This document shows, in pieces, positions 21,254 through 39,526 of a stretch of DNA of 64,000 nt. Location of the stretch: the IMG/VR virus record IMGVR_UViG_3300032236_001613, positions 124,001 to 188,000 of that record; one strand, 5' to 3'. Each line of letters starts with the position of its first letter. Positions within the stretch are counted from its first letter, which is position 1. A program made the position numbers and the translations under genes. Under the pieces are notes generated by a model. The model was not told where the DNA came from. It ran no database searches and saw only the letters and a list, made by a program, of their open reading frames with translations.

Positions 21254-21632
21254 TGGTAGTAAACTCTTAAGTAAAGACGGTCTGGACGGGGAGTGCGACC
21301 CTCCCCCACCTCCACCATAGGTACATTTGATGCGAAAAATATTTGTAGTTGGGTTTTTAATGTTGTTGGCGGTCTTTGGTATATATAAGATTTTAAAATA
21401 TTCAGCTGACCATCCAACACAATGTAATATGTGGCACAGATGTTAAGTGTATCTATGTCGGGGGTGCGTAGTTTCGACAGAGTGTGTAATAGTCAAAGGG
21501 CTACTGGTGAGATGACTGACCTAATCAGCATAAACAAAAATAAATGCTAATGACAGTGTTTATGATGTTGCTATCGCTGCTTAATTGCAGTCTAGTAAAC
21601 AGAGTTTGATCACTCGGTAACAGAACGGTCAG
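21254..21632 (+). ncRNA. ssrA: Circularly permuted (two-piece) tmRNA: acceptor piece ending CCA at 21317, coding piece starting at 21460
   Basis: GGGGGTG (21460-21466) pairs with CACCTCC before ACCA (ends 21317), with the G3:U alanine determinant; T-arm GGGGAG-TGCGACC-CTCCCC; tag frame 21546-21584 reads ANDSVYDVAIAA-stop; the outer ends of both pieces are approximate. Confidence 0.93.
21330..21446 (+). CDS. 38-aa putative membrane peptide inside the tmRNA intervening segment
   Basis: MRKIFVVGFLMLLAVFGIYKILKYSADHPTQCNMWHRC; AGGT upstream; one transmembrane helix. Confidence 0.55.
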   Translation: MRKIFVVGFLMLLAVFGIYKILKYSADHPTQCNMWHRC

Positions 21633-21661
21633 ATAAAGGAGCTTCGGCTCCTTTATTTTTT
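21633..21661 (+). terminator. Intrinsic terminator after the tmRNA coding piece
   Basis: ATAAAGGAGC-TTCG-GCTCCTTTAT followed by a T run. Confidence 0.88.
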
Positions 21662-21699
21662 GTAATACAAATGTAATGTTTTTATAGTTAAATATTACT

Positions 21700-22449
21700 A
21701 TGAAAAAAACATACCGAACAATATGTATTAGTGATGTGCATTTAGGCACTAAAGACTGCAAAGCTGAACAGCTTAATAATTTCCTTAAAAATAACAGTTG
21801 CGAAACACTGTATCTAATAGGTGATATTATTGACGCATGGAAAATTCAACAGAATCGTTGGAAATGGAAACAAAGCCATACTAACGTAATTCGTAGAATT
21901 TTAGGACATGCTAAACGCGATACCAGAGTAGTTTACATAGCCGGTAATCATGACGAATTCTTAAGACCATTATTGCAATATAATATTGCGTTTGGACATG
22001 TAGAAATCGTTAACCAAACAGAGCATCACGGTATTGATGGAAAACGTTACTTATTAACACATGGTGATTTGTTTGATGGTATTACAAGACTAGCACCATG
22101 GATTAGTTTCTTAGGCGATCGTGCGTATGACGTTGTATTGTCTTTAAACACCCGATTTAATTGGTTACGGCATCGTATGGGATTTGGTTACTGGAGCCTA
22201 AGCAAATATCTAAAACAACGTGTTAAAAAGGCTGTCGACTTTATGTTTCAATTTGAACATAATCTTGCTGCCTACTGCAAAAAACGTGGGTTCGATGGTG
22301 TAATCTGCGGTCATATACATCATGCAGAAATTAAAGAAATCGACGGTGTTGTATATATGAACGACGGCGACTGGGTGGAGTCTATGACTGCCTTGGTCGA
22401 GCATCATGACGGTCGTTGGGAAATCGTTACCTGGACTAAAGAAAAATAA
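21700..22449 (+). CDS. Calcineurin-like metallophosphoesterase, LpxH/UDP-2,3-diacylglucosamine hydrolase-like
   Basis: ISDVHLG, LIGDIID, AGNHDE, THGDLFD and ICGHIH motifs. Confidence 0.85.
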   Translation: MKKTYRTICISDVHLGTKDCKAEQLNNFLKNNSCETLYLIGDIIDAWKIQQNRWKWKQSHTNVIRRILGHAKRDTRVVYIAGNHDEFLRPLLQYNIAFGHVEIVNQTEHHGIDGKRYLLTHGDLFDGITRLAPWISFLGDRAYDVVLSLNTRFNWLRHRMGFGYWSLSKYLKQRVKKAVDFMFQFEHNLAAYCKKRGFDGVICGHIHHAEIKEIDGVVYMNDGDWVESMTALVEHHDGRWEIVTWTKEK

Positions 22450-22525
22450 TCGGACACAAATATTGGGTGTCACTGGAACCGTAACCAGTATCTCTCTTAT
22501 AAATATCTTTATAGGGAGTACTAAA

Positions 22526-22681
22526 ATGAAACAGTCTAAACTAGTAAAGAAAATGTATCGTGCTTGTTTAGAGCATGATGTAGAACGTCAGCGCGAGTTA
22601 ACCCTAATCGAATATAGTAAAATTTTCAAACGTAAACAAGCAGGAAAATATTTTACTACTAAGTGGACTATAATTCGGTAA
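22526..22681 (+). CDS. Small basic hypothetical protein
   Basis: GGGAG SD and TATAAATA (22498-22505) support the ATG at 22526. Confidence 0.5.
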   Translation: MKQSKLVKKMYRACLEHDVERQRELTLIEYSKIFKRKQAGKYFTTKWTIIR

Positions 22682-22689
22682 AAGCTTAG

Positions 22690-22718
22690 TTGACGATAAA
22701 ACCTTTTAAAACTATAAT
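22690..22718 (+). promoter_or_regulatory. Sigma70-type promoter
   Basis: TTGACG-17 nt-TATAAT. Confidence 0.75.
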
Positions 22719-22740
22719 AGTGTTTTAACAGGAGAATAAT

Positions 22741-23046
22741 ATGTCAGCAATTAACACGTTGTATTCTTTGGAACAGTTTTGCCTAGATTCTAGCAGCCTT
22801 GCAGAACGGTGGCAGGGTAATAGTGCGTTCTATCAGTGGAGTAAGGGCAAAACTACCGACGAAGGTATTATTAACGGTGTAGTACGCAAGCTAGCCGGAA
22901 CAGACACGGCAGGTAATGAAATTTGGGTAGTTGCTGGTTCTTTTAAGATTGCTGCTAACGGAGAAATTCTACGCTTTACCGGTATTAGTAAAAAGCAATG
23001 GGGTATTATTCAAGTACTTCCTGCTAAGGATCCAATTGCTGCATAA
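22741..23046 (+). CDS. Hypothetical phage protein
   Basis: AGGAG SD; 101 aa. Confidence 0.6.
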   Translation: MSAINTLYSLEQFCLDSSSLAERWQGNSAFYQWSKGKTTDEGIINGVVRKLAGTDTAGNEIWVVAGSFKIAANGEILRFTGISKKQWGIIQVLPAKDPIAA

Positions 23047-24347
23047 TGTTTGCTTTAGTATATCTAGCATTTATTGCAGCCGTAATTATTTTCTATCTTA
23101 AAAAGAAAAGAAAAACTCACAACAAATCGGTAGCAGTATTAGAAGAAGCAGTTGAATCAGGCTTAACAGAGCCTGTTTCAATGCATCCGGTAATTGATAC
23201 CGATCAGTGTATTGGCTGTGGTAGTTGCGTTAAAGCTTGTCCAGAAAGCCACCACCATGTTTTAGGGTTAATTAACGGAAAAGCAGCTCTTACTAGTCCT
23301 ACCGAATGTATCGGGCATGGTGCTTGTAAATTAGCTTGCCCGGTTGATGCAATTACTCTAGTATTTGGTACTGCACGACGTGGCGTGGATTTACCAGTAG
23401 TTAAGCCCACGTTTGAAACTAATGTTAATGGACTCTATGTTGCTGGTGAACTAGGCGGAATGGGACTAATTAAGAATGCACTAACACAAGGGAGGGAAGC
23501 TGTTGAAAATATTAGTAAGAATTGTATTCGTGGTCAAAGTCAGTATGATCTTATTATCGTTGGCGGCGGCCCTTCTGGTCTCGGCGCAGCTTTTACTGCA
23601 CTTAGCGAAAAACTTAATTATGTAGTGATTGAGCAAGATTCGTTAGGAGGTACTGTTTTTAAATATCCTCGTAGAAAATTGGTTATGACCCAACCAGTTA
23701 CTATGCCCGTACTAGGTAAGATACACTTTAGAAATACTACTAAAGAAGAACTATTAGGCTACTGGAGCGAAAAAAGCCAAGAGCACAATTTAAATCTTAG
23801 ATTTAATGAACGTGTTGAAAGTGTTGTTAAAGACGGCACAGGGTTTGTTGTTACTACTACATTAGGCATTTACCATGCTACTAATGTATTGTTATCCATC
23901 GGCAGGCGTGGTAGCCCGAGAACACTAGGAGTGCCTGGCGAGGAATTGTCAAAAGTAGTTTACAGGCTTATCGACCCTGAACAATATAAGGGCGCACATG
24001 TATTAGTAGTCGGCGGCGGCGATAGCGCACTAGAAGCTGCTGCTAGCGTTGCTGAAGCCGATCCTACTAATCGCGTTACACTGTCTTATCGTAGTGCAGT
24101 TTTTCAAAGAGCTAAACCTGCTAATAGACAGCGTGTAGATGCTGCTGTTAAAAAGGGCAACTTAGAAGTAATACTAAATTCTAACGTATACCAAATTGGT
24201 GAGGATTATGTTATTCTCCAAATTGGTAAAGAAGATTTGCGTATTTTAGAGAATAATGCTATTATTGTTAATGCAGGTGGTATCTTACCAGATGCATTTT
24301 TGAAAAAATGTGGTATTAAAGTTGTAACTAAGTGGGGTACAGAATGA
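23046..24347 (+). CDS. Membrane-anchored 2x[4Fe-4S] ferredoxin / FAD-NAD(P) thioredoxin-reductase-like oxidoreductase
   Basis: N-terminal transmembrane helix; CIGCGSCVKACP and CIGHGACKLACP; GGGPSG and GGGDSA dinucleotide-binding motifs. Confidence 0.85.
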   Translation: MFALVYLAFIAAVIIFYLKKKRKTHNKSVAVLEEAVESGLTEPVSMHPVIDTDQCIGCGSCVKACPESHHHVLGLINGKAALTSPTECIGHGACKLACPVDAITLVFGTARRGVDLPVVKPTFETNVNGLYVAGELGGMGLIKNALTQGREAVENISKNCIRGQSQYDLIIVGGGPSGLGAAFTALSEKLNYVVIEQDSLGGTVFKYPRRKLVMTQPVTMPVLGKIHFRNTTKEELLGYWSEKSQEHNLNLRFNERVESVVKDGTGFVVTTTLGIYHATNVLLSIGRRGSPRTLGVPGEELSKVVYRLIDPEQYKGAHVLVVGGGDSALEAAASVAEADPTNRVTLSYRSAVFQRAKPANRQRVDAAVKKGNLEVILNSNVYQIGEDYVILQIGKEDLRILENNAIIVNAGGILPDAFLKKCGIKVVTKWGTE

Positions 24348-24670
24348 TTGATATTGGATTTGGACTTGAATTACCGATCACACATGAAATTAAAAATCTC
24401 TATACTAAGGATTTTCCGTTAACCAAAAACAAGATCTTTGAGTTGAACCTATATAAAGACGTGGTATTGATAAAGGCTAATTTTGATTATTTTCATGCCG
24501 ATGACCACGCGGGTGCTACGCTTTGGTTAGGATTACTAGGCTATAATCTAGAGATAAAGATTTTTGATAAACGTCATTGGAATTATGATGCTAACCGTTG
24601 GTATCTACCTGGCGAGGAAGATATGGAATTTATTGAAAGCATTTCAGAATTTGATAACGAGTCAAAGTAA
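24344..24670 (+). CDS. Hypothetical phage protein
   Basis: ATGA overlap with the previous stop (ORF track starts it at 24332). Confidence 0.5.
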   Translation: MIDIGFGLELPITHEIKNLYTKDFPLTKNKIFELNLYKDVVLIKANFDYFHADDHAGATLWLGLLGYNLEIKIFDKRHWNYDANRWYLPGEEDMEFIESISEFDNESK

Positions 24671-25068
24671 TGTCAATGCATTTAGCACATCCTGCTCTTA
24701 CTACCACTGGTAAGAAGAAAGGCAAGAAAAAGTGGGCAAGTGCCGAGCATAAACGTCGTAGTGAACTAGCTCGCGAACAACAAGAAGCCTTGTATCGCGA
24801 ATATAATGTAAAGACAACTAAGACTAACAAGAAAGGCTTTATGACTTCTAGTTATAAACCTTCTTATACTGCGCCTCGGCAAGATGCTACCCGAGCAATT
24901 AAGAGCGTAGAACCTACGTGGGCAGCATGTGTCAAGCCGCAGATTCATCAATATTCCGGTGAGCGACAACTTCTTGGTATTGCTACTATGCACAAAAGCA
25001 ACATGGTTCCTATCTTTGCTGATAATAAAGAAGTAGCAGTCGACATTGCTAAGATGAGACGAGGATAG
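24670..25068 (+). CDS. Hypothetical basic phage protein
   Basis: 132 aa; GIATMHKSNMVPIF C-terminus is typical of large-phage hypotheticals. Confidence 0.6.
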   Translation: MSMHLAHPALTTTGKKKGKKKWASAEHKRRSELAREQQEALYREYNVKTTKTNKKGFMTSSYKPSYTAPRQDATRAIKSVEPTWAACVKPQIHQYSGERQLLGIATMHKSNMVPIFADNKEVAVDIAKMRRG

Positions 25069-25147
25069 TGTGATTTCTATATCTTTTGGGCGCAAGCGCA
25101 GGAGAAAGAAAAAGGATAAGGTCACAATTCAGGAAATAAATATTTCC

Positions 25148-26212
25148 ATGAATACCTTATCCAATAAGATTGTAGCCTATTTAACTTTACTCTCAGGACT
25201 AGCAATTTCCGCAGTTGCAGTTTATTATTCCGTTTCAGGACTAACTGCAATATTCTCGGCGGCTGTAATTCCTATTATCGTAATGGGTGTTACATTAGAA
25301 ATTAGCAAACTAGTTGCTACAGTGTGGCTTAAACAAAATTGGAATATTGCACCTGCTGCTGTTAAGGGTTACTTAATAGCAGCAATTGTTGTGCTTATGC
25401 TAATCACTAGCATGGGTATCTTTGGCTTCCTTAGTAAAGCACACAGCGATCAGAGTTTAGTCAGCGGGGACGTAGCTGCACGTATTGCAGTCTACGACGA
25501 AAAGATTAAAACCGAAAAAGAAAATATTGAAACAGATCGTAAAGCATTAAAACAAATGGACAATGCTGTTGATCAATTAATGGATCGGTCTACAGACGAG
25601 CAAGGCGCAGGGCGTGCAGTAAGGTTACGTCATACACAGACTGAGGAAAGAACAAGACTATTAACAGAGATTGCCGAATCACAAAAACGTATAGCTGCAC
25701 TTAACGATGAACGTGCACCTATTGCTGCAGAATCTCGTAAAGTTGAAGCTGAAGTGGGTCCTATTAGATACATTGCTGCATTTGTTTATGGTAACACAGA
25801 TCCTAGTATATTAGAAAGGGCAGTAACATGGGTCATCTTAATTCTTATTCTAGTGTTTGACCCGCTAGCCGTTATTCTATTATTAGCTAGCCAATACAGT
25901 TTTCAACAATTTAGTAAACAAGATAAAAACAAAACAGATAATCATGATCCAACCGAACTCTGGAATTCTATGATTAAAGCTGCAGAAGAAAAAAGCGACG
26001 ATGCTGAAGGGTACGTTCAAAATGAAGAACAAAACACTAGTAGTCGTTGGAAAAATGTTAGTAGTCAAATTAGTCAAAAAGACTATTTAGAAGCGTCAGA
26101 AAAAAATATAAAAGAGATGATTAAAAGAGTTAAAGATGGTGTTTTACCTTTTTACCAAGTTCCTGAGGAAATGAAGGACGAAGTAAAGAAGGGATTAAAG
26201 AATGCCCGCTAA
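25148..26212 (+). CDS. Membrane protein with a central coiled coil
   Basis: AATAAATA late-like motif supports ATG 25148; several transmembrane helices flank a long coiled coil. Confidence 0.65.
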   Translation: MNTLSNKIVAYLTLLSGLAISAVAVYYSVSGLTAIFSAAVIPIIVMGVTLEISKLVATVWLKQNWNIAPAAVKGYLIAAIVVLMLITSMGIFGFLSKAHSDQSLVSGDVAARIAVYDEKIKTEKENIETDRKALKQMDNAVDQLMDRSTDEQGAGRAVRLRHTQTEERTRLLTEIAESQKRIAALNDERAPIAAESRKVEAEVGPIRYIAAFVYGNTDPSILERAVTWVILILILVFDPLAVILLLASQYSFQQFSKQDKNKTDNHDPTELWNSMIKAAEEKSDDAEGYVQNEEQNTSSRWKNVSSQISQKDYLEASEKNIKEMIKRVKDGVLPFYQVPEEMKDEVKKGLKNAR

Positions 26213-26591
26213 AATTACTTTAATCACACCACCTGACATTTTTCAAAACGATCAAGAAAGTATACTATTTGTTGATCTAACCACCGAAGATCAAGATGCT
26301 GTAATTAAATATTTTACTAACGTTGATTATAGTATTAATATCTATTTTTATAGTGGTGAAGCAAACGTACCTTGGTTAATGCATGCCCTTTCTTGTAGCA
26401 ATTATCGTTATATTAACTTAAATAACATGTCGGCTATAACAAGCTATTTGATAGCTTATATACTGTCAAAACAAGATGTATTTTACTCGATTGAGGATAA
26501 CAGTGTGGCTGAGATTTATAGTCACATTAATTTAAATCGTGTTAATAATGCTATTGAATTTTTAAAGAAGGTTTACAGTGACAACAAATAA
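26202..26591 (+). CDS. Hypothetical phage protein
   Basis: 129-aa ORF overlapping its neighbours. Confidence 0.55.
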   Translation: MPAKITLITPPDIFQNDQESILFVDLTTEDQDAVIKYFTNVDYSINIYFYSGEANVPWLMHALSCSNYRYINLNNMSAITSYLIAYILSKQDVFYSIEDNSVAEIYSHINLNRVNNAIEFLKKVYSDNK

Positions 26592-27822
26592 AAATCATGT
26601 TTGCGACTTTTGTCAAAAGGCAAAAGAAGATGTCGAAAAACTTATTGTCGGCGATAATGCTGCTATTTGTAACGACTGTGTAGAACTATGCATTAGTATC
26701 TTAGATGAAGATAAAGTAAAGAAATTCCCGTTAGGTGATAATAAAAATTTACTAAATCCTGTGCATATTAAAGAATATTTAGATCAGTATGTTATTGGTC
26801 AAGAAAATGCAAAAATTGCTCTTAGTGTAGCAGTATGCCAACATTTTAAAAGAGTGTTCACTGATGTTAAAGACATTGAAATTGAAAAAACTAATGTATT
26901 AATTTTAGGACCTACTGGGTGTGGTAAAACTATGCTAGCTAAAAAGCTAGCAGAATACCTTAACGTACCTTTTGCTATTTGTGATGCAACTGGCTTAACA
27001 GAAGCTGGATACGTGGGCGACGATGTTGAGAGCGTATTAAATCGTTTAATTTCAGCAGCCGACGGCGATATTGATAAAGCTAAACAAGGTATTGTTTATA
27101 TTGACGAAATTGATAAACTAAGTCGTAAAGGTGAAAACACTAGTCTTACACGAGATGTTGGTGGAGAAGGTGTTCAACAAGGTCTACTAAAAATGATCGA
27201 AGGATCAGTAATACGAGTACCTGCTGCAGATAAGCGTAAGCATCCTAGAGGCGACATGATTGAAGTTGATACAAAAAACATATTGTTTATATGTGGCGGT
27301 GCATTTGTTGGGTTAGATAAGATTATTAACCGTAGAAATAAATCAGGTGCAGTTGGATTCGGAGCATCAGTAACGTCAAATAAAGATACATTAGGTTATA
27401 GCGATGTAATTACTAAAGATTTAATTACTTTCGGACTGATACCTGAATTTATCGGACGTTTCGGATTAATTACACATGTTGACGAATTAAGTGTAGACGA
27501 TTTGGTAAAAATACTTAAAGAACCAAAAAACAGTTTAATCAGTCAATATAAACATTTATTTGCTATCGACGGCATTGAATTAGAATTTAAAGACGAAGCA
27601 CTAAAGGAGGTTGCAGAAAAAAGTAAACAACTTCAAACAAATGCTAGAGGCTTAAAAAACATTTTAGAAAAAATCTTATTAAATTATCAATTCGAAGCAA
27701 TGGATCTTGTTCAGCGAGGCCTCAGTAAAATTGTGATAAGTAAAGAAGCAGTTCATGGTAAATCTGCTGAATTAATTTTTAATAAAACAAAGAAGAAGTT
27801 AAATTATGAAAGTAATAGTTAA
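26578..27822 (+). CDS. clpX: ATP-dependent Clp protease ATP-binding subunit ClpX
   Basis: Zn finger CDFC..CNDC; GPTGCGKT; GYVG pore loop; IDEIDK; RKH loop; VGF ClpP-docking loop. Confidence 0.96.
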   Translation: MTTNKNHVCDFCQKAKEDVEKLIVGDNAAICNDCVELCISILDEDKVKKFPLGDNKNLLNPVHIKEYLDQYVIGQENAKIALSVAVCQHFKRVFTDVKDIEIEKTNVLILGPTGCGKTMLAKKLAEYLNVPFAICDATGLTEAGYVGDDVESVLNRLISAADGDIDKAKQGIVYIDEIDKLSRKGENTSLTRDVGGEGVQQGLLKMIEGSVIRVPAADKRKHPRGDMIEVDTKNILFICGGAFVGLDKIINRRNKSGAVGFGASVTSNKDTLGYSDVITKDLITFGLIPEFIGRFGLITHVDELSVDDLVKILKEPKNSLISQYKHLFAIDGIELEFKDEALKEVAEKSKQLQTNARGLKNILEKILLNYQFEAMDLVQRGLSKIVISKEAVHGKSAELIFNKTKKKLNYESNS

Positions 27823-28012
27823 GGATGGTAATATTAACGCTGCTCTAAGAAAGTTCAAAAAGAAAGTTGAAGACAGTGGTATATTGATTGAAGTTTTAGA
27901 AAGACAATACTACGAAAAGCCCACAATTGCAAGACGTCGAGCTAAGGCTGCTGCAAAAGCTCGTTGGCGTAAAAAGCAAAGAGAATTGACAACGCAGGCT
28001 AGATACGATTGA
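27806..28012 (+). CDS. rpsU: 30S ribosomal protein bS21
   Basis: NINAALRKFKKKVEDSGIL..RQYYEKPT signature. Confidence 0.9.
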   Translation: MKVIVKDGNINAALRKFKKKVEDSGILIEVLERQYYEKPTIARRRAKAAAKARWRKKQRELTTQARYD

Positions 28013-28037
28013 CATTTTGCTGTAGTTTTGCTATAGT
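28009..28037 (+). promoter_or_regulatory. Sigma70-type promoter
   Basis: TTGACA-17 nt-TATAGT, with the ATG only 8 nt downstream. Confidence 0.7.
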
Positions 28038-28045
28038 AATTGTCT

Positions 28046-28570
28046 ATGCCAAAACACTTAATGGTCGATTTAGAAACACTATCGGTTGCTCCTGATGCAG
28101 TTATATTGACATTAGGAGCTGTTCATTTTGATCCTTTTGATAAAGGAATTATTAATGAACTTTATATTAAATTTGATCTCGACGATCAGGATCTTTTAAA
28201 AAGATCCATTGATCCACTAACATTAGATTGGTGGGCAAAGCAAGATTCTAAAATAATGGAAGAAGCATTTTCTCCAGATGGAAGAACCAAAGTATCTGAT
28301 GCTATCGATCAGTTCCACAAGTTTGCATGGGGGTGCGATAAATTTTGGAGTCACGGCGCAGTATTTGATCTTATGATCATAGAAAATTTATACCGTCAAC
28401 TAAAAAAATCATTTCCTTGGAACTTTTGGGATTTGAGAGACACAAGAACATTATTTGATCTAGGATTTAAGTCTAACATGACAAAAGACTCTATGCATAA
28501 TGCTCTTGAAGATGCTAAACGGCAGGCTATTGGTGTACAAAACGTTTATGCTCAAATAAAGAGAACATGA
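28046..28570 (+). CDS. DEDD-family 3'-5' exo(ribo)nuclease
   Basis: MVDLETL, SHGAVFD, RDTRT and HNALEDA motifs. Confidence 0.85.
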   Translation: MPKHLMVDLETLSVAPDAVILTLGAVHFDPFDKGIINELYIKFDLDDQDLLKRSIDPLTLDWWAKQDSKIMEEAFSPDGRTKVSDAIDQFHKFAWGCDKFWSHGAVFDLMIIENLYRQLKKSFPWNFWDLRDTRTLFDLGFKSNMTKDSMHNALEDAKRQAIGVQNVYAQIKRT

Positions 28571-30914: not shown

Positions 30915-32318
30915 ATGATGAATATGTTTGCAGAAGCAGTTAAAGAAGTACAAATCGAAACTCGTACCATTAACGGTATGAAAACTTTCGATTCCAGCAA
31001 GAGTCGTCTCGTTGACTTGTTCTTTGCAATCGGTGCAAGCCGTGGAAAAGACTTAAGCGCCGAATTCCACCGTGCTCTTGCTGAAGATAAAACGCTAGCA
31101 CTTCGCTTGCTCATGTGGGCTCGCGATGTTCGCGGTGGGGCAGGCGAGCGAGATGTTGTTCGCACTATCTTGCTTAGTCTGGAAAAGAAAGATCCAGATG
31201 TGTTGAAGCGTGTGCTTCCGCACCTAGCTGAGTTCGGCCGCTGGGATGACTTGTTGATTTTCGAGCATGATCCGGAAATCAAGAGCATGGCGTTTGATCT
31301 CATCCACGCAGCTCTTAAGGCCGGCAACGGTCTTTGTGCTAAGTGGATGCCTCGTAAGGGCGAGAAGGCGGCAGAGTTGCGTAATGCACTTGGTATGAGT
31401 CCTAAGACTTATCGCAAAACTCTAGTCAATTTGACTAAGGTTGTTGAGCAGAATATGTGTGCTAACGACTGGACTAACATTAACTACAACCACGTTCCTA
31501 GCGTGGCTGCTAGTCGTTACCAGAAAGCGTTTAAGAAGCACGACCCAGAGGGTTATGAAGCGTATGCTTCTAAACTCGAAAAGGGTGAAGCTAAGATTAA
31601 TGCTGGTGCGGTTTATCCGTATGACATTATCAAGGCACACAATGCAGGCGGTAATGTAAAGGTTGTTACTGCGCAATGGGAAGCATTGCCTAACTACATC
31701 GGTGATGAGTTAATCCTTCCGATGGTGGACGTTTCAGGCTCTATGTCTGTGCCAATTGGTAGCAACAAGAACCTGCAATGTATCGACGTTGCAGTTAGCT
31801 TAGGTTTATATCTTGCTGATAAGAATACCGGTCCGTTTAAGGATATGTTCTTAACTTTCTCGAGTGATCCGGAGCTACAAATTCTTAAGGGCGACCTCAT
31901 TAAGAAAATTGCACAGCTACAAAAAGCTGATTGGGCTATGAGCACCGATCTTAATAAAGCATTTGAGTTAATTCTCAATTACGCTGTTAAGGGCAAAGTT
32001 GCAACTAAGGACATGCCTCAGTATGTGCTCATCTTGTCAGATATGGAGTTTAATCAGTGCACACGACACAATGACAGTGCTATGCAAATGATCGTACGTA
32101 AGTACGAAGCTGCCGGCTACGAGGTTCCGAATATTATTTTCTGGAATCTAGCAGCACGTAGCGGAAACGTTCCAGTTAAGTATGACAAGAAAGGTACTGC
32201 ATTAATTTCCGGATTCAGCCCGGCAATCATGACTTCGGTTCTAGCAGCTAAGAGTATTACTCCGATAGATGTGATGCTTGAGACTCTAAACAAGCCACGT
32301 TACGCTGTTATCAGCTAA
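30915..32318 (+). CDS. TROVE-like/vWA domain protein (DUF2828 / Ro60-like)
   Basis: WARDVRGGAGER, GRWDDLL, AKWMPR, VPSVA; C-terminal vWA with the MIDAS motif DVSGSM and SDMEF. Confidence 0.85.
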   Translation: MMNMFAEAVKEVQIETRTINGMKTFDSSKSRLVDLFFAIGASRGKDLSAEFHRALAEDKTLALRLLMWARDVRGGAGERDVVRTILLSLEKKDPDVLKRVLPHLAEFGRWDDLLIFEHDPEIKSMAFDLIHAALKAGNGLCAKWMPRKGEKAAELRNALGMSPKTYRKTLVNLTKVVEQNMCANDWTNINYNHVPSVAASRYQKAFKKHDPEGYEAYASKLEKGEAKINAGAVYPYDIIKAHNAGGNVKVVTAQWEALPNYIGDELILPMVDVSGSMSVPIGSNKNLQCIDVAVSLGLYLADKNTGPFKDMFLTFSSDPELQILKGDLIKKIAQLQKADWAMSTDLNKAFELILNYAVKGKVATKDMPQYVLILSDMEFNQCTRHNDSAMQMIVRKYEAAGYEVPNIIFWNLAARSGNVPVKYDKKGTALISGFSPAIMTSVLAAKSITPIDVMLETLNKPRYAVIS

Positions 32319-32323
32319 CATAG

Positions 32324-32347
32324 AAAAGGCCCGTAAGGGCCTTTTTT
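32324..32347. terminator. Bidirectional intrinsic terminator
   Basis: AAAAGGCCC-GTAA-GGGCCTTTTTT between convergent genes. Confidence 0.88.
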
Positions 32348-32353
32348 ATTGTA

Positions 32354-33238: not shown

Positions 33239-33344
33239 AAAGATACCTTTAAAAAAATTATTTATCGTTCAAACAATATCAAAATTATTAAATTGGTATA
33301 TAATAAAAAATAAATAATTTTCTAGTATAAGGAAAAAAATTTTT

Positions 33345-34744: not shown

Positions 34745-35712
34745 TGAATAAGTCAGCAGTAGTGCTAGGGGCAGGTGGATTTATTGGAAACCATTTAGTT
34801 AATAGATTAAAAAAAGAAGGATACTGGGTTAGAGGAGTAGACTTAAAATATAACGAATACCAACAAACCTCTGCTGATGAATTTATAATTGGCGATCTTA
34901 AAGATAACTCTATTGTTGAAAAGGTTATGTATAAGGAAACTCCATTTGATGAAGTATATCAACTAGCTGCAGATATGGGCGGTGCTGGCTATATTTTTAG
35001 TGGCGATAATGACGCTAATGTTATGTATAACTCAGCTCTTATAAATTTAAATGTAGTACATCATTCAACAAGATACAATGTAGGCAAAGTTTTTTATAGC
35101 AGCAGTGCATGTATGTACCCTGAACATAATCAGATCGATCCAAACAATCCAAATTGCGAGGAAAGTAGTGCTTACCCAGCAAACCCAGACAGCGAATACG
35201 GATGGGAAAAACTTTTTAGTGAGAGATTATACTTAGCATATCATAGAAACTATAAACTAAATGTAAGAATAGCAAGATTTCATAACATTTTTGGACCATA
35301 CGGTGCTTGGAATAATGGAAAAGAAAAATCGCCAGCAGCAATTTGCCGAAAGATATCTGAGGCAAAAGACGGCGGTGAAATTGAAGTATGGGGCGACGGC
35401 GAACAAACAAGAAGCTTCCTCTATATCGACGAATGCTTAGACGGTGTTCGTAAATTAATGGATAATGATTTTCTCGGTCCAGTTAACATTGGATCAGACG
35501 AAATGGTAACTATTAACAAATTAGTTAGTATTGTGTCCAACATTGCAAATAAAGAAGTAAAAATAAAACATGTGCCGGGTCCGTTAGGCGTTCGCGGAAG
35601 AAATTCCGATAATAAACTAATTAAGGAAAAATTAGGCTGGGCGCCAACACGCCCTCTAAAGGAAGGTCTTATCGAAACTTATAACTGGATCAATCAGCAA
35701 GTTAACACATAG
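34744..35712 (+). CDS. NAD-dependent epimerase, GDP-mannose 3,5-epimerase-like
   Basis: GAGGFIG, LAADMGGAGYI, SSSACMYP, YGWEK, GVRGRNSDN. Confidence 0.88.
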   Translation: MNKSAVVLGAGGFIGNHLVNRLKKEGYWVRGVDLKYNEYQQTSADEFIIGDLKDNSIVEKVMYKETPFDEVYQLAADMGGAGYIFSGDNDANVMYNSALINLNVVHHSTRYNVGKVFYSSSACMYPEHNQIDPNNPNCEESSAYPANPDSEYGWEKLFSERLYLAYHRNYKLNVRIARFHNIFGPYGAWNNGKEKSPAAICRKISEAKDGGEIEVWGDGEQTRSFLYIDECLDGVRKLMDNDFLGPVNIGSDEMVTINKLVSIVSNIANKEVKIKHVPGPLGVRGRNSDNKLIKEKLGWAPTRPLKEGLIETYNWINQQVNT

Positions 35713-35717
35713 ATAAT

Positions 35718-36137
35718 TTACTTAAACCATCCTATCTTTTCGCCAGCGGCTTTACGTCGCTGGTATTCTTCTAAGCTTCCGGGATAACGTGTAGCCCAAA
35801 TCATCCAAAAGGCCATAAATGCACTTACACCTAGTGTTAATTTCCAATTATGAGTAGTTAACCAAATAGTTACAACACTAGCATCCATGCATAAGAACAT
35901 AACCCATTTAATCTTAGTGGGGTAAACTCTGTTATTACTCCAATTTTTAATAAAAGGTCCAAATAACCTATGGTTAAGCATATAGTTATGGAACTTTTCC
36001 GAACTCTTACTAAAGCACCATGCTGCTAAAATACTAGGAGTGCTCCATGGCAATCCAGGAACAAATGTTCCTAAGTAAGCAACACCTAAAAATAGTATAC
36101 CTAAGGTAAACCAAAGAGCTTTTTTAATTTTATTCAT
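35718..36137 (-). CDS. YbaN/DUF454-family inner-membrane protein
   Basis: GVAYLGTFVPGLPWSTPSILAAWCFSKSS..FHNYMLNHRLFGPFIKNW. Confidence 0.8.
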   Translation of the reverse strand: MNKIKKALWFTLGILFLGVAYLGTFVPGLPWSTPSILAAWCFSKSSEKFHNYMLNHRLFGPFIKNWSNNRVYPTKIKWVMFLCMDASVVTIWLTTHNWKLTLGVSAFMAFWMIWATRYPGSLEEYQRRKAAGEKIGWFK

Positions 36138-36165
36138 TTTTTTTCTCGTTTGAAATATTTATTTG

Positions 36166-36195
36166 TTGACTTTACCCCACGTTATATTTTATAGT
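36166..36195 (+). promoter_or_regulatory. Sigma70-type promoter facing the ORF-free structured region
   Basis: TTGACT-18 nt-TATAGT. Confidence 0.6.
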
Positions 36196-36199
36196 ATAT

Positions 36200-36720
36200 C
36201 AACTAAGGCACACTCACTGGCATAAACATAGGCACATCAATCAACGCTTAAGCTCGCACCGGCTAATTTCGGGTGCCTATGATAACCGGACAACAAAGTC
36301 GCGGGGACAGAAATCCTGTGTGTTGACAGGAACTCAGCCACTACCCCTTCAGGGATGATGATGGAATATGCCTATATAATCCGTTTGGCTAAGATAAAAA
36401 TACTAAGGCTCTTTTGATCGCGGCTCTGTGAAAAAGATACAACCGCAAATACTACATATCTGCTAACATCGGTGTGTAGCGTTCCCGTTAGATTGAAGTT
36501 AGGAATAAGAAGTACAGGCTAACCGCTTCTGCGCAGCAATGCAATTTCCGAATGTTAGTGACCAACGAACTCAGGTAATAATCGTTAGAAAATCTTCGCC
36601 CTGTTTTGGGCGAAGTATGACATTAAAATCTAGGTAATCAATTCACTCTTAATAATTTTTCTCTTTCTTATAAAAGGTGATGAGCGCGAGCGAAATCACG
36701 GGCGAATCCTTTCGCCCCTT
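36200..36720 (+). ncRNA. Candidate large structured ncRNA (family unassigned)
   Basis: About 520 nt with no ORF, more GC-rich than its flanks, many hairpins (e.g. CATAGGCAC/GTGCCTATG, TCCTGT/ACAGGA, CTTCGCCC/GGGCGAAG). Confidence 0.5.
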
Positions 36721-36726
36721 AAATAA

Positions 36727-36755
36727 TTGACACTAATGGTAATTCCAATTATAAT
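36727..36755 (+). promoter_or_regulatory. Perfect sigma70 consensus promoter, likely leaderless transcript
   Basis: TTGACA-17 nt-TATAAT; ATG 6 nt downstream, no SD. Confidence 0.85.
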
Positions 36756-36761
36756 TACGTT

Positions 36762-37580
36762 ATGAAAATCAACATTGTCAGCGATCTACATTTAGATGTT
36801 AGCGGGTATCAAGAATTACCTGGCGGAGAAGTATTAATACTCAGCGGAGATATCGCCGAAGTACGTAATATTCACAAACACTTTCACAGCACTAAGCTTT
36901 TATCTGATGTACCTAATCATACATACGCATGTTCGGAATTCTTCCATTACGAATGTGCTAAGTACGATCGTGTGTTCTATGTAATGGGCAATCATGAGCA
37001 CTACAGAAGTACCTATCAGAATACTCGTAGAGATCTTGAGTATATGATGCCTAAAAATCTAACCATTTTAGAAAATGATGTAGTAGATTATAATGGCGTT
37101 ATGTTTATGGGTGCTACGTTATGGACTGATTTAAATCGTGGAGATCCGTTAACAGAATATCATGTTAAACAATGTATGAACGATTATCATAAGATTACTC
37201 AAAAAGGTGATGTGTACGATATGTATCATAAACTTAAACCTTCTTTTACTATGTCAGAGCATAGGCGTAGTTTAGAGTATTTTAAGATTGTGCTCGAACA
37301 GAACAAGGATCGTAAGTTTGTTATTGTAACGCATCATGCACCTAGCTTTGAAAGTGTTGACGATTATTACAAAAATGATACTCTAATGAATGGCGGATAT
37401 ATGAGTCGTTTAGAAGAGTTTATCTTAGATCGCCCTAACATCTCTATGTGGGTGCACGGGCATATGCATAACAAATCCGATTATCTAATTGGGGATACTC
37501 GTGTAGTATGCAATCCTAGAGGCTATTTGCCATACGAAAACGAAAATGGATTCGATCCAGGATTTACGGTAGAGTTATAA
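36762..37580 (+). CDS. Metallophosphoesterase
   Basis: VSDLHLD, LSGDI, MGNHEHY, VTHHAP, WVHGHMH. Confidence 0.88.
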   Translation: MKINIVSDLHLDVSGYQELPGGEVLILSGDIAEVRNIHKHFHSTKLLSDVPNHTYACSEFFHYECAKYDRVFYVMGNHEHYRSTYQNTRRDLEYMMPKNLTILENDVVDYNGVMFMGATLWTDLNRGDPLTEYHVKQCMNDYHKITQKGDVYDMYHKLKPSFTMSEHRRSLEYFKIVLEQNKDRKFVIVTHHAPSFESVDDYYKNDTLMNGGYMSRLEEFILDRPNISMWVHGHMHNKSDYLIGDTRVVCNPRGYLPYENENGFDPGFTVEL

Positions 37581-37894
37581 TGTTTAAGTTTCCGTGGCTT
37601 TGGAAAAAGCACAGCAAGAAAAAGAAACTTTATATTCCTATCCATCAACATTATGATATCTACCACAGAATTAGGGTAAGGGCTTCTGATGAATGGTGTA
37701 AAAATAATCCAGGAAAAAGTGTTGCGGATATGTACATTGACTATACATATCCACAGTCTCTATCTAAAATTTTTCTCCAATATACAGGAGTTAACATTAA
37801 ATTTAGTAGCGGGTTGCATAATGATGGAGAATCTTTCTTCGTATTCGACAATGAAGCAGCATACACTATGTTTTTATTAAAATGGTCATCATAA
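37580..37894 (+). CDS. Hypothetical phage protein
   Basis: 104 aa ending FLLKWS. Confidence 0.5.
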   Translation: MFKFPWLWKKHSKKKKLYIPIHQHYDIYHRIRVRASDEWCKNNPGKSVADMYIDYTYPQSLSKIFLQYTGVNIKFSSGLHNDGESFFVFDNEAAYTMFLLKWSS

Positions 37895-37903
37895 GGATAT
37901 TAT

Positions 37904-38287
37904 ATGTTTTACAATAACGACACCCATTATCATTTCTATTTAGGCACAGATCGTCGTCCGTTTTTTATTAAAAAATTATGGTGGAAATACATGACCGGAG
38001 TACGTGTTGCAGTTGCATGGCCAAAAACTCTTAATGACGATAAAAAACAGCCTGAATATAAAAAACTTAAAGACGATAATACAATACATGCTATTGTACC
38101 CACAGACGAATTAGACAAAGCTTATCGCCCGTGGCTAGAAAAACAAGCAGGCTATAAAGGCATAGATTGGGATTGGGAGATAGTTACAGAAAAAGACAGT
38201 GGCGATCAATTGTTAGGTAGACTTTATTTGAGATTTCGCAAAGGTAAAGAAAAATTAGCTACTATGGCGGTGTTAAAATGGAGTTAA
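37904..38287 (+). CDS. Hypothetical phage protein
   Basis: 127 aa ending AVLKWS. Confidence 0.5.
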   Translation: MFYNNDTHYHFYLGTDRRPFFIKKLWWKYMTGVRVAVAWPKTLNDDKKQPEYKKLKDDNTIHAIVPTDELDKAYRPWLEKQAGYKGIDWDWEIVTEKDSGDQLLGRLYLRFRKGKEKLATMAVLKWS

Positions 38288-38574
38288 TAGCAGATACTAT
38301 CGAGGAGCTCGAGTGGGTTATTTTACGTTGTAGCTCTGCAAAATATATTAAGTATATTACAAAAAATCATCGACTAGATCCTAACACTTTTCAAATAATG
38401 GTAGCATTTGGTTATGTACTTGAAATAAGTCCGCAGGATTATACAATGTGGGCATTGCGGTATTCTAACAAAGAAGAAAAACTTGAATATTTTTATGAAG
38501 ATGAAATGGCTGGTATTCAAGAAACAGTCGATAAAATAAAAAAATCATTTGACGAAAAAAATTATATTAAGTAA
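38278..38574 (+). CDS. Hypothetical phage protein
   Basis: 98-aa ORF overlapping the previous gene. Confidence 0.45.
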   Translation: MELIADTIEELEWVILRCSSAKYIKYITKNHRLDPNTFQIMVAFGYVLEISPQDYTMWALRYSNKEEKLEYFYEDEMAGIQETVDKIKKSFDEKNYIK

Positions 38575-38582
38575 TATAAATA
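38575..38582 (+). promoter_or_regulatory. T4-like late promoter TATAAATA
   Basis: Exact motif upstream of the Hsp20 gene. Confidence 0.55.
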
Positions 38583-38639
38583 TCGTTGTAGATGACCTAA
38601 AAGGCTCTACAATACATCTTACTTTATAAGGAGAAAAAA

Positions 38640-39083
38640 ATGAATAGCTTAGTAAGACAAGCACGTTTTGATACAAATACACTAAACGCTCTAAACAGAG
38701 CACTCGTAGGGTTTGATAATTTGTTTTCGCAGCATTTTGTTAATTCTGTAGAATCGAGTTATCCACCTTATAATATTTTAAAACGCGACAAGGATACTTA
38801 CGAGGTTCAGGTTGCTGTAACTGGTTTCGATTCAAAAGAGATCTCCGTTGAACTCGATCAGAATCAGTTAATTATTCGTGGAGAGGTTGAGGAAAAAGAT
38901 GACGAAAATGTACAGTACATTCATCGTGGTCTTGCTGGACGCAACTTTACCCGTGTACTGCAATTAGCAGAACATATCGAAGTTGGCGAGGTTAAGATTA
39001 AAAATGGTGTATTGCACATTGAACTTAATCACGTGATTCCCGAAGCGTTAAAGCCTCGGCTATTAAAGATTAAGTCGGAGTAA
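38640..39083 (+). CDS. Small heat-shock protein (Hsp20/IbpA family)
   Basis: SYPPYNI, YIHRGLAGRNFTR, NGVLHIEL. Confidence 0.95.
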   Translation: MNSLVRQARFDTNTLNALNRALVGFDNLFSQHFVNSVESSYPPYNILKRDKDTYEVQVAVTGFDSKEISVELDQNQLIIRGEVEEKDDENVQYIHRGLAGRNFTRVLQLAEHIEVGEVKIKNGVLHIELNHVIPEALKPRLLKIKSE

Positions 39084-39092
39084 TTTAAAACG

Positions 39093-39120
39093 GGGTAGGG
39101 AGTAATCCCTACCCTTTATT
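39093..39120 (+). terminator. Intrinsic terminator-like hairpin
   Basis: GGGTAGGGA-GTAA-TCCCTACCC followed by TTTATT. Confidence 0.75.
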
Positions 39121-39223
39121 ATGAAAATATTTCTCTCGATTTTACTTACATTAACTAGTATAATACCTGTACTAGTTTGTTACATATTAATAATTTTAGA
39201 AAACAAAAAAAACGGAGTTAATA

Positions 39224-39526
39224 ATGGGCGATACAGCCGTAGTAAGCAAAGAGACAGTTAAGAGTCGTATTAAAGAACCTAAGAAGTTTAAAGTTCTAAT
39301 ACTTAATGACGATTATACTCCTATGGATTTTGTTATTGCTATTCTTGTTACTGTTTTTAAACACCCAGAACCATCTGCTGTAAAAATTATGTTGCAAGTT
39401 CATAACGAAGGCAGTGGAGTAGCAGGTGTATATAACTACGAAATCGCAGAACAGAAAGGGATTGAAACTACCAATCTTGCCAAAGAAAACGGTTATCCAT
39501 TACAAATCAAGGTTGAACCTGTATGA
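39224..39526 (+). CDS. clpS: ATP-dependent Clp protease adaptor ClpS
   Basis: FKVLILNDDYTPMDFVI, MLQVHNEGSGVAG, YPLQ. Confidence 0.95.
   Translation: MGDTAVVSKETVKSRIKEPKKFKVLILNDDYTPMDFVIAILVTVFKHPEPSAVKIMLQVHNEGSGVAGVYNYEIAEQKGIETTNLAKENGYPLQIKVEPV

What the first reader, a model, noticed from the sequence alone, without database searches (positions are those of the whole stretch)
21546..39526. A distributed phage translation-rescue and proteolysis kit: tmRNA tag + ClpX + ClpS + bS21 + Hsp20
Seen: the tag ends in IAA-COOH. ClpX (26578-27822) keeps its GYVG, RKH and pore-2 loops and a VGF docking loop. bS21 overlaps the clpX stop. Hsp20 and ClpS lie at 38640-39526. No clpP, clpA or smpB is in the window. 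Established: ClpX recognises the C-terminal Ala-Ala of ssrA tags through these loops, and ClpS is the N-degron adaptor of ClpA/ClpC. Inference: the phage supplies both the tagger and the tag reader while borrowing host ClpP and SmpB, which could redirect host proteolysis.
Basis: partly seen in the sequence, partly recalled or inferred. Interest (0 to 1): 0.6.

Follow-up and report, generated by a model that had tools for sequence, protein, structure and literature searches.

The report
Huge phage with own Clp proteases and tmRNA
A 328-kb freshwater phage carries a two-piece ribosome-rescue RNA, the protease parts ClpX, ClpP, ClpA and ClpS, a ribosomal protein and two chaperones; this set recurs across a large group of related uncultured phages but is built from parts already reported in other huge phages.

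Summary
Every sequence observation holds. There is a genuine tmRNA whose tag is ANDSVYDVAIAA, plus ClpX with all its functional loops, bS21 overlapping the clpX stop, Hsp20 and ClpS.

Two corrections change the picture:
- **The tmRNA is the circularly permuted, two-piece form.** ARAGORN misses it. Rfam RF04321 scores it at 120 bits.
- **The phage does not borrow host ClpP.** The window is part of a 328,068-bp phage record that also encodes a canonical ClpP, a full-length ClpA and a DnaJ-type co-chaperone outside the window. SmpB, SspB and ArfB-type factors are absent.

The set is inherited within a large clade of uncultured phages:
- 251 viral contigs carry this ClpX.
- bS21 abuts clpX in 75 of 80 loci.
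- The permuted tmRNA is in 36 of 47 related records, with compensatory base-pair changes and an invariant G3:U70.
- ClpP and ClpA are in both complete relatives; SmpB is in none.
- Hsp20-ClpS is an optional block.

Only clpX-bS21 and Hsp20-ClpS-heme oxygenase are tight units. The rest is scattered among unrelated genes, and the clustering is not significant (p about 0.08).

My best reading is a self-contained Clp proteolysis and proteostasis set, plus a trans-translation RNA that depends on host SmpB. Each component is already known from huge phages, so this is a new member of a known kind.

The parts
21255..21317 (+). tmRNA acceptor piece. It holds the 3' half of the tRNA-like domain: a P2 strand, the T-arm, the acceptor 3' strand CACCTCC, the discriminator A, and an encoded CCA at 21315-21317.
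   Evidence: Rfam RF04321 alignment, the sequence itself, and covariation in 28 sequences.
21318..21459 (+). Intervening segment of the permuted tmRNA gene, about 142 nt and presumably excised during processing. Its two ends pair as an extension of the acceptor stem.
   Evidence: It appears as an insertion in the Rfam alignments. Alignment columns 66-76 pair with columns 323-333 and show compensatory changes. Its length varies widely among relatives: whole-gene matches span 207-458 nt.
21460..21658 (+). tmRNA coding piece. It starts with the acceptor 5' strand GGGGGTG, which gives G3:U70, followed by the D-loop analogue, the tag frame and 3' hairpins. It ends in a terminator-like hairpin at 21631-21658.
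   Evidence: The G:U pair is invariant in 28 of 28 sequences.
21546..21584 (+). Tag reading frame ANDSVYDVAIAA plus the TAA stop.
   Evidence: Relatives' tags all start with AND and end in [LMVI]AA or MVA.
26202..26591 (+). Conserved 129-aa ORF that overlaps the clpX start by 14 nt. It has a flavodoxin-like fold resembling nucleoside 2-deoxyribosyltransferase; its function is unknown.
   Evidence: It is present upstream of clpX in 79 of 80 loci. The AF2 model has pLDDT 88.9. The best PDB match is 4mcj, TM 0.71, E 4e-4. There is no Pfam, PHROG or NCBIfam hit.
26578..27822 (+). ClpX, the AAA+ unfoldase (414 aa), with zinc finger, GYVG, pore-2, RKH and VGF loops.
27806..28012 (+). Ribosomal protein bS21 (68 aa). 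Its start lies 17 nt inside clpX.
   Evidence: It abuts clpX (about -20 to +22 nt) in 75 of the 76 loci that have it.
28040..28570 (+). Rv2179c-like 3'-5' exonuclease, a conserved downstream neighbour of clpX-bS21.
   Evidence: Pfam PF16473 at 117 bits, phrog_255 exonuclease, present in 71 of 80 loci.
38640..39083 (+). Small heat-shock protein of the Hsp20/IbpA type (147 aa), followed by a hairpin and T-run at about 39090-39120.
39224..39526 (+). ClpS N-degron adaptor (100 aa). It keeps the NDDYTPM motif and the His of the binding pocket, and it overlaps the start of heme oxygenase.
   Evidence: The predicted complex with the phage ClpA N-domain scores 0.90 against a best control of 0.00.

Best explanation
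The window lies in a roughly 328-kb tailed phage, distantly Rak2-like by its terminase. The phage carries its own complete Clp proteolysis machinery: ClpP, the unfoldases ClpX and ClpA, and the ClpA adaptor ClpS. It also carries holdase and co-chaperone genes (Hsp20, a DnaJ-type protein), a ribosomal protein bS21, and a two-piece tmRNA.

**Shown here:**
- All of these genes are intact, with catalytic and docking motifs in place.
- tmRNA, ClpX-bS21, ClpP and ClpA are conserved across a large clade of uncultured relatives.
- The tmRNA is under structural selection, and selection also acts on both ends of its tag.
- SmpB, SspB and RF-1-domain rescue factors are missing.

**Inferred from established knowledge of the bacterial pathways:**
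- The tmRNA precursor is cut into two pieces by host tRNA-processing enzymes.
- It is charged with alanine by host AlaRS through G3:U70 and delivered by host SmpB and EF-Tu to stalled ribosomes.
- The added tag, ANDSVYDVAIAA, is read by ClpX. This can be the phage ClpX and probably the host one as well.
- The tagged protein is degraded in phage ClpP, which both phage unfoldases dock through identical VGF loops.
- ClpS steers ClpAP to N-degron substrates.

The likely benefit is to keep ribosomes free and clear truncated or misfolded proteins during a long, translation-heavy infection in which host mRNAs are being destroyed, and to recycle amino acids. The parts behave as separately inherited modules of one pathway rather than as one operon.
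For: - **Family assignments and motifs:**
- **Own ClpP, ClpA and DnaJ outside the window:**
- **Absences:** no SmpB, SspB or RF-1 domain.
- **Clade conservation:**
  - 251 viral contigs carry this ClpX at 61-70% identity.
  - bS21 is present in 76 of 80 loci and abuts clpX in 75 of them.
  - The permuted tmRNA is above cut-off in 36 of 47 records, including both complete genomes.
  - ClpP and ClpA are in both complete relatives.
  - SmpB is in 0 of 25 records.
- **tmRNA selection:** 33 of 40 predicted pairs show compensatory changes and the G:U pair is invariant. Tags keep AND...[LMVI]AA while the middle varies.
- **ClpS-ClpA docking:** the predicted ClpS-ClpA N-domain complex scores 0.90 against a best control of 0.00. 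That mark was reached by 51 of 78 solved complexes and 2 of 108 mismatched pairs. The runs agree in at least 95% of contacts, and the partner's pLDDT is 87. Because a like complex is already solved, this shows likeness only.
- **Age of the gene:** the clade's ClpX forms one group (SH-aLRT 100), separated by long branches from 39 bacterial ClpX at 53% identity or less. It is an old viral gene, not a fresh host capture.
Against: - There is no expression or biochemical evidence. Only DNA runs hold the sequence.
- Whether the phage ClpX prefers the phage tag, or the phage ClpP over the host ClpP, is unknown.
- Hsp20-ClpS is missing from one complete relative, so it is not essential to the set.
- The parts are not clustered beyond chance: three units within 18.3 kb of a 328-kb genome gives p about 0.08.
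- Conservation within one clade is shared ancestry and does not prove functional coupling.
- The record is 92% complete by CheckV, so absences in it alone are weak. The two complete relatives agree with it.
Confidence: 0.6

Rival explanations
1. One reading: the phage supplies only the tagger and the tag reader, plugs them into host ClpP and host SmpB, and so redirects host proteolysis.
For: SmpB is indeed absent. ClpX keeps its ClpP-docking loop and tag-reading loops. Mixed assemblies with host ClpP cannot be excluded.
Against: The phage encodes its own canonical ClpP with an intact triad, and that gene is conserved in both complete relatives. It also encodes its own ClpA for ClpS.
Confidence: 0.1
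2. The modules are unrelated. tmRNA, ClpXP, ClpAPS, bS21 and Hsp20 are separate auxiliary genes that each act with host partners on different targets, for example regulated turnover of phage or defence proteins, or virion assembly. In this reading the phage tag is not a preferred substrate of the phage protease, and the apparent kit is a by-product of a gene-rich accessory region.
For: - The parts are scattered among phosphoesterases, redox enzymes, sugar epimerases and a methyltransferase.
- The clustering is not significant.
- Hsp20-ClpS is optional.
- In Bacillus phage G, ClpX and ClpP were detected in virions, which hints at roles other than ssrA clearance (PMC12484599).
Against: In bacteria, ssrA-tagged proteins are the archetypal ClpXP substrates. 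The phage tags keep exactly the C-terminal residues that ClpX reads. tmRNA, ClpX and ClpP co-occur in all three near-complete genomes.
Confidence: 0.2
3. clpX-bS21 is a ribosome-takeover unit. ClpX unfolds or removes host translation-initiation components so that phage bS21 can take their place, and tmRNA and the other Clp parts are secondary.
For: The start of bS21 overlaps or abuts the clpX stop in 75 of the 76 loci that have bS21, across ClpX divergence down to 61% identity. In the rhizobiophages Atu_ph07 and Phosso, clpX is followed directly by IF-3. Their ClpX falls on the phage side of a branch with 99% support.
Against: Adjacency is the only evidence. No known ClpX function of this kind exists. 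Both cases could reflect one ancestral arrangement or simple co-expression timing.
Confidence: 0.07
4. The tmRNA is a decoy that soaks up host SmpB and shuts down host trans-translation, as proposed for the TLD-only RNA of mycobacteriophage DS6A (PMC4131195). Alternatively, it is a leftover of integration at a host ssrA gene.
For: No phage SmpB is present. tmRNA genes are common integration sites.
Against: The gene is complete: both pieces, the tag frame and a terminator are present. It shows covariation, and its tag ends are conserved in 28 or more relatives. A decoy or an att fragment would not need a conserved degron.
Confidence: 0.03

Closest known systems
Two-piece (permuted) tmRNAs of aquatic phages, e.g. 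the OM43 phage Melnitz and pelagimyophages (Buchholz et al. 2022, PMC9004378)
   Same: A circularly permuted ssrA gene in a lytic aquatic myovirus-type phage that has no phage SmpB. The tag is of the proteobacterial AND...AA type.
   Different: Here the gene sits in a 328-kb genome together with a full Clp system. The Rfam scans of the window and of the tmRNA stretch matched no riboswitch family next to it. The intervening segment is long, about 142 nt, and ARAGORN misses the gene. The best subtype model is beta_tmRNA, and only just above its cut-off.
Bacterial trans-translation plus ClpXP/ClpAPS degradation (E. coli ssrA-SmpB, ClpXP, SspB, ClpAPS)
   Same: The same RNA architecture, apart from the permutation; the same tag logic (AND...xAA); and the same protease parts, with conserved loops and catalytic residues.
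   Different: No SmpB and no SspB are present. The genes are dispersed rather than arranged as tig-clpP-clpX-lon. Both unfoldases carry VGF docking loops, where E. coli has IGF in ClpX and IGL in ClpA.
Clp, chaperone, tmRNA and bS21 genes of other huge phages: Bacillus phage G, Agrobacterium phage Atu_ph07, Sinorhizobium phages AP-J-162 and Phosso, and Lak phages (Al-Shayeb 2020 PMC7162821; Iyer 2021 PMC7824862; PMC11242549; PMC12484599; Chen 2022 PMC9723584)
   Same: Huge phages sporadically carry ClpP, ClpX, ClpA, ClpS, Hsp20, DnaJ, tmRNA and bS21. Hsp20 and Clp proteases are often found within ten genes of phage bS21. Phage G has a tmRNA plus an adjacent clpP-clpX pair.
   Different: ClpX here is at most 51% identical to any ClpX in the GenBank phage collection. 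The whole set, ClpXP plus ClpAPS plus a two-piece tmRNA plus bS21, is combined in one lineage and is conserved across hundreds of contigs. clpX is fused in an operon with bS21, rather than with clpP as in phage G or with IF-3 as in Atu_ph07.

Membership tests
tmRNA, permuted/two-piece form (Rfam RF04321 / RF01850) | Covariance-model score above the curated gathering score | tested here: met
   120.2 bits against 47 for RF04321, and 89 bits against 84 for RF01850.
tmRNA, permuted/two-piece form (Rfam RF04321 / RF01850) | tRNA-like domain with a 7-bp acceptor stem, a G3:U70 alanine identity pair, a T-arm and a CCA end | tested here: met
   GGGGGTG pairs with CACCTCC, followed by A and CCA. The G:U pair is invariant in 28 of 28 sequences, and both the T-arm and the acceptor stem covary.
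tmRNA, permuted/two-piece form (Rfam RF04321 / RF01850) | Permuted gene order: the 3' acceptor half with CCA lies upstream of the 5' acceptor strand and the tag frame | tested here: met
   CCA is at 21315-21317, the 5' strand begins at 21460 and the tag is at 21546-21584.
tmRNA, permuted/two-piece form (Rfam RF04321 / RF01850) | Tag reading frame that starts at a GCN resume codon and ends in a hydrophobic residue, Ala-Ala and a stop | tested here: met
   The tag is ANDSVYDVAIAA followed by a stop. Relatives' tags follow AND...[LMVI]AA or end in MVA.
tmRNA, permuted/two-piece form (Rfam RF04321 / RF01850) | Maturation into two base-paired RNAs, alanylation, and SmpB-dependent tagging | not testable with these tools
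   No RNA runs hold the locus. SmpB is absent from the phage, so a host protein would be needed.
ClpX | N-terminal C4 zinc finger plus a single AAA+ module that scores above the equivalog cut-off | tested here: met
   PF06689 at 46.7 bits. NF003745 at 530 bits against 359, and TIGR00382 at 491 bits against 371.
ClpX | Pore-1 GYVG, pore-2 loop, RKH loop, IGF-type ClpP-docking loop, Walker A and B | tested here: met
   Alignment to E. coli ClpX (8e91) shows all of them present, with IGF replaced by VGF.
ClpP | Ser-His-Asp triad and a family score above cut-off | tested here: met
   NF001368 at 302 bits against 249 and PF00574 at 261 bits against 20. The triad residues sit in SMGS, IHQP and ERD, judged by reading them against the shown alignments to two other ClpP structures, 5g1q and 8r04. 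The strict equivalog TIGR00493 reaches only 283 bits against 308.6. The score is far above that of the prohead-protease model (103 bits).
ClpA | N-domain plus two AAA+ modules, no ClpB-type middle domain, and a ClpP-docking loop | tested here: met
   End-to-end alignment to E. coli ClpA (1ksf), residues 7-731 against 5-737. Both Walker A motifs are present, and VGF sits at the IGL position. ClpB models match only in two split stretches.
ClpA | Score above the NCBIfam equivalog cut-off | tested here: not met
   TIGR02639 scores 850 bits against a cut-off of 993, and relatives score 869-882. This is a divergent ClpA; by architecture it is ClpA-like.
ClpS | ClpS fold with the N-degron pocket residues and a ClpA N-domain interface | tested here: met
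   PF02617 at 101.8 bits against 23. NDDYTPM and the pocket His are conserved, judged by reading them against the shown alignments to Agrobacterium and Caulobacter ClpS structures (4yjm, 3dnj). The predicted complex with the phage ClpA N-domain scores 0.90 against a control of 0.00 (likeness only). NCBIfam equivalog cut-offs are not reached (105 bits against 149).
Ribosomal protein bS21 | Full-length match above the equivalog cut-off | tested here: met
   TIGR00030 at 60.2 bits against 28.95, PF01165 at 58.6 bits, and phrog_21469.
Single co-regulated 'kit' (operon or gene island) | Parts contiguous or clustered beyond chance and co-inherited | tested here: not met
   Only clpX-bS21 and Hsp20-ClpS are contiguous. 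More than 20 unrelated genes lie between the parts. The simulation gives p about 0.08. ClpP, ClpA and DnaJ lie 60-90 kb away. Hsp20-ClpS is absent from one complete relative.

The most novel reading that the evidence does not exclude
The tight and long-conserved clpX-bS21 coupling in this clade, together with the parallel clpX-IF-3 adjacency in Atu_ph07-type rhizobiophages, reflects a direct functional link between a viral ClpX lineage and takeover of translation initiation. For example, ClpX might extract or degrade host bS21 or other initiation components so that the phage versions can replace them. The phage tmRNA and the phage's own ClpP would then form a partly orthogonal degradation route.
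Probability: 0.1. Interest if true: 0.75.

Novelty: new member of a known kind. Interest (0 to 1): 0.4.

Why it matters
If this reading is right, a widespread group of freshwater huge phages brings nearly the whole bacterial pathway for rescuing stalled ribosomes and destroying the failed products. Only SmpB is left to the host.

That gives a clean natural system for three questions: how much of cellular protein quality control a virus needs to own, whether viral ClpXP and tags are tuned to each other, and why phage clpX genes sit next to translation-initiation genes.

It also shows that standard tmRNA annotation with ARAGORN misses these permuted phage genes, so counts of phage tmRNAs are likely too low. 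The individual parts have all been seen in huge phages before, so this extends a known pattern rather than breaking it.

Tried and rejected
- **ARAGORN** on the window and on the whole genome found 27 tRNAs but no tmRNA. The gene was found only with Rfam models.
- **nhmmer** with the window's tmRNA found only 6 of the relatives that Infernal later found. Sequence-only search is too weak here.
- **Megablast** of the 19-kb region against GenBank phages gave no match. There is no close cultured relative. ClpX is at most 51% identical to any ClpX in that collection, and the terminase is 42-43% identical over its full length to those of Rak2-like phages.
- **The 129-aa ORF coupled to clpX as a possible SspB-like adaptor** is rejected. 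It has no SspB hit, and its confident model has a flavodoxin/nucleoside-deoxyribosyltransferase-like fold. The ESM Atlas search gave no usable lead.
- **Other rescue and chaperone factors in the genome.** The RF-1 domain (ArfB/PrfA/B) and Cpn10 are absent.
- **Expression evidence.** Only DNA runs hold the locus, and no RNA run does. Read laying was therefore not used, because contigs cannot show RNA ends.
- **Host assignment from ClpX** failed. The best bacterial ClpX are 47-53% identical and spread over many phyla.
- **Physical clustering of the parts** was tested by simulation and is not significant once adjacent pairs are counted as units.
- **Promoter-like sites** are no more frequent than in shuffled sequence (45 against 37 +/- 7), so I treat them only as hints.

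Full report
**1. What the window is**

The window is bases 124,001-188,000 of a 328,068-bp IMG/VR virus record, 37% G+C, which CheckV rates 92% complete.
- The record has an 858-aa large terminase that is 42-43% identical over its full length to those of Rak2-like jumbo phages.
- It has 27 tRNA genes, 25 of them within about 10 kb.
- It has no near relative in the GenBank phage collection.
- The only sequencing runs that hold it are DNA runs. Four are labelled only 'metagenome' and one, with a small share of the words, 'freshwater metagenome'.

**2. Check of the observation**

- **tmRNA.** Rfam finds it at 21255-21584 (RF04321, 120 bits against a gathering score of 47) and at 21211-21658 (RF01850, 89 against 84). 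The tag frame at 21546-21584 reads ANDSVYDVAIAA followed by a stop.
- **ClpX (26578-27822).** It passes the NCBIfam equivalog cut-off (530 against 359). Aligned to E. coli ClpX, it keeps the C4 zinc finger, Walker A and B, GYVG, the pore-2 loop, RKH, and a VGF loop at the IGF position.
- **bS21 (27806-28012).** It starts 17 nt before the clpX stop.
- **Hsp20 (38640-39083) and ClpS (39224-39526).** Both are clear family members. ClpS keeps the NDDYTPM...H residues of the N-degron pocket.

**3.

*The tmRNA gene is circularly permuted.* The 3' half of the tRNA-like domain, ending in an encoded CCA at 21315-21317, comes first. An intervening segment of about 142 nt follows. Then comes the 5' acceptor strand GGGGGTG (from 21460), the tag frame, and a terminator-like hairpin at 21631-21658. 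ARAGORN misses the gene entirely.

*The rest of the genome changes the interpretation.* It encodes:
- A canonical ClpP at C1:211446-212045, scoring 302 bits on NF001368 against 249, with the Ser-His-Asp triad intact and Francisella and E. coli ClpP as the best PDB matches.
- A 757-aa ClpA at C1:240171-242444, which aligns end to end with E. coli ClpA, has an N-domain and two AAA+ modules but no ClpB middle domain, and carries VGF at the IGL docking position.
- A 282-aa DnaJ-type protein immediately upstream of clpA.

SmpB, SspB, RF-1-domain proteins (ArfB, release factors) and Cpn10 are not found. So the phage owns ClpXP and ClpAPS outright, and the one obligatory trans-translation protein it lacks is SmpB.

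**4. Relatives**

- 251 viral contigs encode this ClpX at 61-70% identity.
- In 80 fetched loci, bS21 is present in 76 and abuts clpX (about -20 to +22 nt) in 75. The 129-aa ORF upstream is present in 79, and the Rv2179c-like exonuclease downstream in 71.
- RF04321 finds a permuted tmRNA above cut-off in 36 of 47 related records, including both 100%-complete genomes (354,680 bp, and 322,512 bp with terminal repeats). In most records whose positions can be compared it lies a few to about 18 kb upstream of clpX on the same strand.
- ClpP and ClpA are in both complete relatives. SmpB is in none of 25 records.
- Hsp20-ClpS is always a contiguous pair, followed by heme oxygenase, but it occurs in only about a third of the loci with enough downstream sequence. 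It is absent from one complete relative.

**5. Is the tmRNA functional?**

An alignment of 28 clade tmRNAs gives a consensus structure in which 33 of 40 pairs show compensatory double changes.
- The G:U pair at the third acceptor position, the alanine identity element, is invariant in 28 of 28 sequences.
- The sequences flanking the intervening segment pair as a covarying extension of the acceptor stem, as expected for a processing precursor.
- The encoded tags differ in their middle but always begin with AND and end in LAA, MAA, VAA, IAA or MVA. These are the parts that matter for recognition in the bacterial system (established knowledge from E. coli).

This rules out an integration remnant or a tag-less decoy.

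**6. Origin of ClpX**

The best bacterial ClpX are only 47-53% identical and come from many phyla. In a quick maximum-likelihood tree the clade is monophyletic (SH-aLRT 100). It is separated from 39 bacterial sequences by long branches and lies with the ClpX of the rhizobiophages Atu_ph07 and Phosso on one side of a branch with 99% support.

Caveats apply: the tree is quick and unrooted, the bacterial sample consists of best hits only, and long-branch attraction is possible. The simplest reading is an old viral ClpX lineage, not a recent host capture.

**7. Organisation**

- Between the tmRNA and clpX lie a metallophosphoesterase, an Fe-S flavoprotein and several unknown ORFs.
- Between bS21 and Hsp20 lie an exonuclease, a redoxin, a DUF7788/DUF2828 protein, a methyltransferase, two sugar epimerases, a DUF454 protein, a structured RNA and another phosphoesterase.
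- Counting adjacent pairs as single units, three of five units falling within 18.3 kb of a 328-kb genome happens by chance about 8% of the time.

So 'distributed' is accurate, and 'kit' is a functional guess rather than a genomic unit.

**8. Mechanism**

*Shown:* intact genes with their motifs, conservation across the clade, RNA covariation, and the specific absence of SmpB.

*Supported by prediction only:* phage ClpS docks on the phage ClpA N-domain with an ipSAE of 0.90, against a best control of 0.00. That mark was reached by 51 of 78 solved complexes and by 2 of 108 mismatched pairs. The runs agree in at least 95% of contacts, and the partner's pLDDT is 87. Because the E. coli complex is solved, this shows likeness, not binding.

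*Inferred from the bacterial pathway:*
- Host RNase P and 3' trimming release the two tmRNA pieces.
- Host AlaRS, SmpB and EF-Tu deliver the tmRNA to stalled ribosomes.
- The tag targets the product to ClpXP.
- ClpS switches ClpAP from ssrA-type to N-degron substrates.
- Hsp20 and DnaJ hold misfolded proteins.
- bS21 enters host 30S subunits.

Both phage unfoldases carry VGF docking loops. This is consistent with, but does not prove, tuning to the phage ClpP.

**9. Comparison with what is known**

- Two-piece tmRNAs are already documented in aquatic phages: 53 of 133 distinct phage tmRNAs in one survey, as well as phage Melnitz (PMC9004378).
- Huge phages are known to carry tmRNA and bS21 (PMC7162821).
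- Jumbo phages sporadically carry ClpP, ClpS, ClpA, ClpX, Hsp20 and DnaJ (PMC7824862).
- Hsp20 and Clp protease genes are frequent within ten genes of phage bS21 (PMC9723584).
- Bacillus phage G has a tmRNA plus an adjacent clpP-clpX pair (PMC12484599).
- Sinorhizobium phage AP-J-162 has a tmRNA, clpX, other Clp ORFs, Hsp20 and DnaJ (PMC11242549).

What this locus adds is the completeness of the set in one widespread uncultured clade, the fixed clpX-bS21 fusion of reading frames, and the fact that standard tmRNA annotation misses the gene.

**10. Verdict**

This is a new member of a known kind and of moderate interest.

Noticed in passing
window 36251-36391 (+); also G000:C1:299833-299969, G001:C1:133225-133358 and G020:C1:211303-211440: A Polynucleobacter-1 RNA (Rfam RF01718, 87-112 bits against a cut-off of 37) sits in a 620-nt gap upstream of a metallophosphoesterase gene. 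A second copy lies elsewhere in the genome, and each of the two complete relatives has one copy. This orphan RNA motif is therefore carried by this huge-phage clade.
   Followed up: partly
window 39224-40714 (+): ClpS overlaps the start of a heme oxygenase gene (39523-40065), which in turn overlaps a ferredoxin-dependent bilin reductase of the PcyA type (40040-40714). The Hsp20-ClpS-HO order recurs in 15 related loci. Why an N-degron adaptor is co-transcribed with bilin synthesis genes is unexplained.
   Followed up: partly
L209:5974-7820 (Sinorhizobium phage Phosso) and L210:5974-7796 (Agrobacterium phage Atu_ph07): In these cultured huge phages, clpX is followed directly by translation initiation factor IF-3. 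In the present clade it is followed by bS21, which also acts in initiation. This is a recurring pairing of clpX with an initiation-factor gene.
   Followed up: partly
window 26202-26591 (+): A conserved 129-aa ORF, translationally coupled to clpX and present in 79 of 80 loci, has no family hit. Its model is confident (pLDDT 89) and shows a flavodoxin-like fold closest to a putative nucleoside 2-deoxyribosyltransferase (4mcj, TM 0.71).
   Followed up: yes
G000:C1:239294-242444 (outside the window): A 282-aa DnaJ-type co-chaperone gene lies directly upstream of clpA. Together they form a second proteostasis pair about 90 kb from clpX.
   Followed up: partly
window 21062-21254 (+): A promoter-like site (TTGCAA-16-TATAAT with a TG) and a 47-aa ORF, which has a hydrophobic N-terminus and a Ser/Gly-rich tail, end exactly where the tmRNA match begins. 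The tmRNA precursor may be transcribed together with this small ORF.
   Followed up: no
window 30915-32318 (+): A 467-aa protein carries DUF2828 and DUF7788 domains (173 and 115 bits). Its function is unknown, and it lies between the clpX block and the Hsp20-ClpS block.
   Followed up: no
G000:C1:194408-203999 (outside the window): An array of 25 tRNA genes lies within about 10 kb. It includes three tRNA-Met(CAT)-type genes and a tRNA-Ile(TAT).
   Followed up: no
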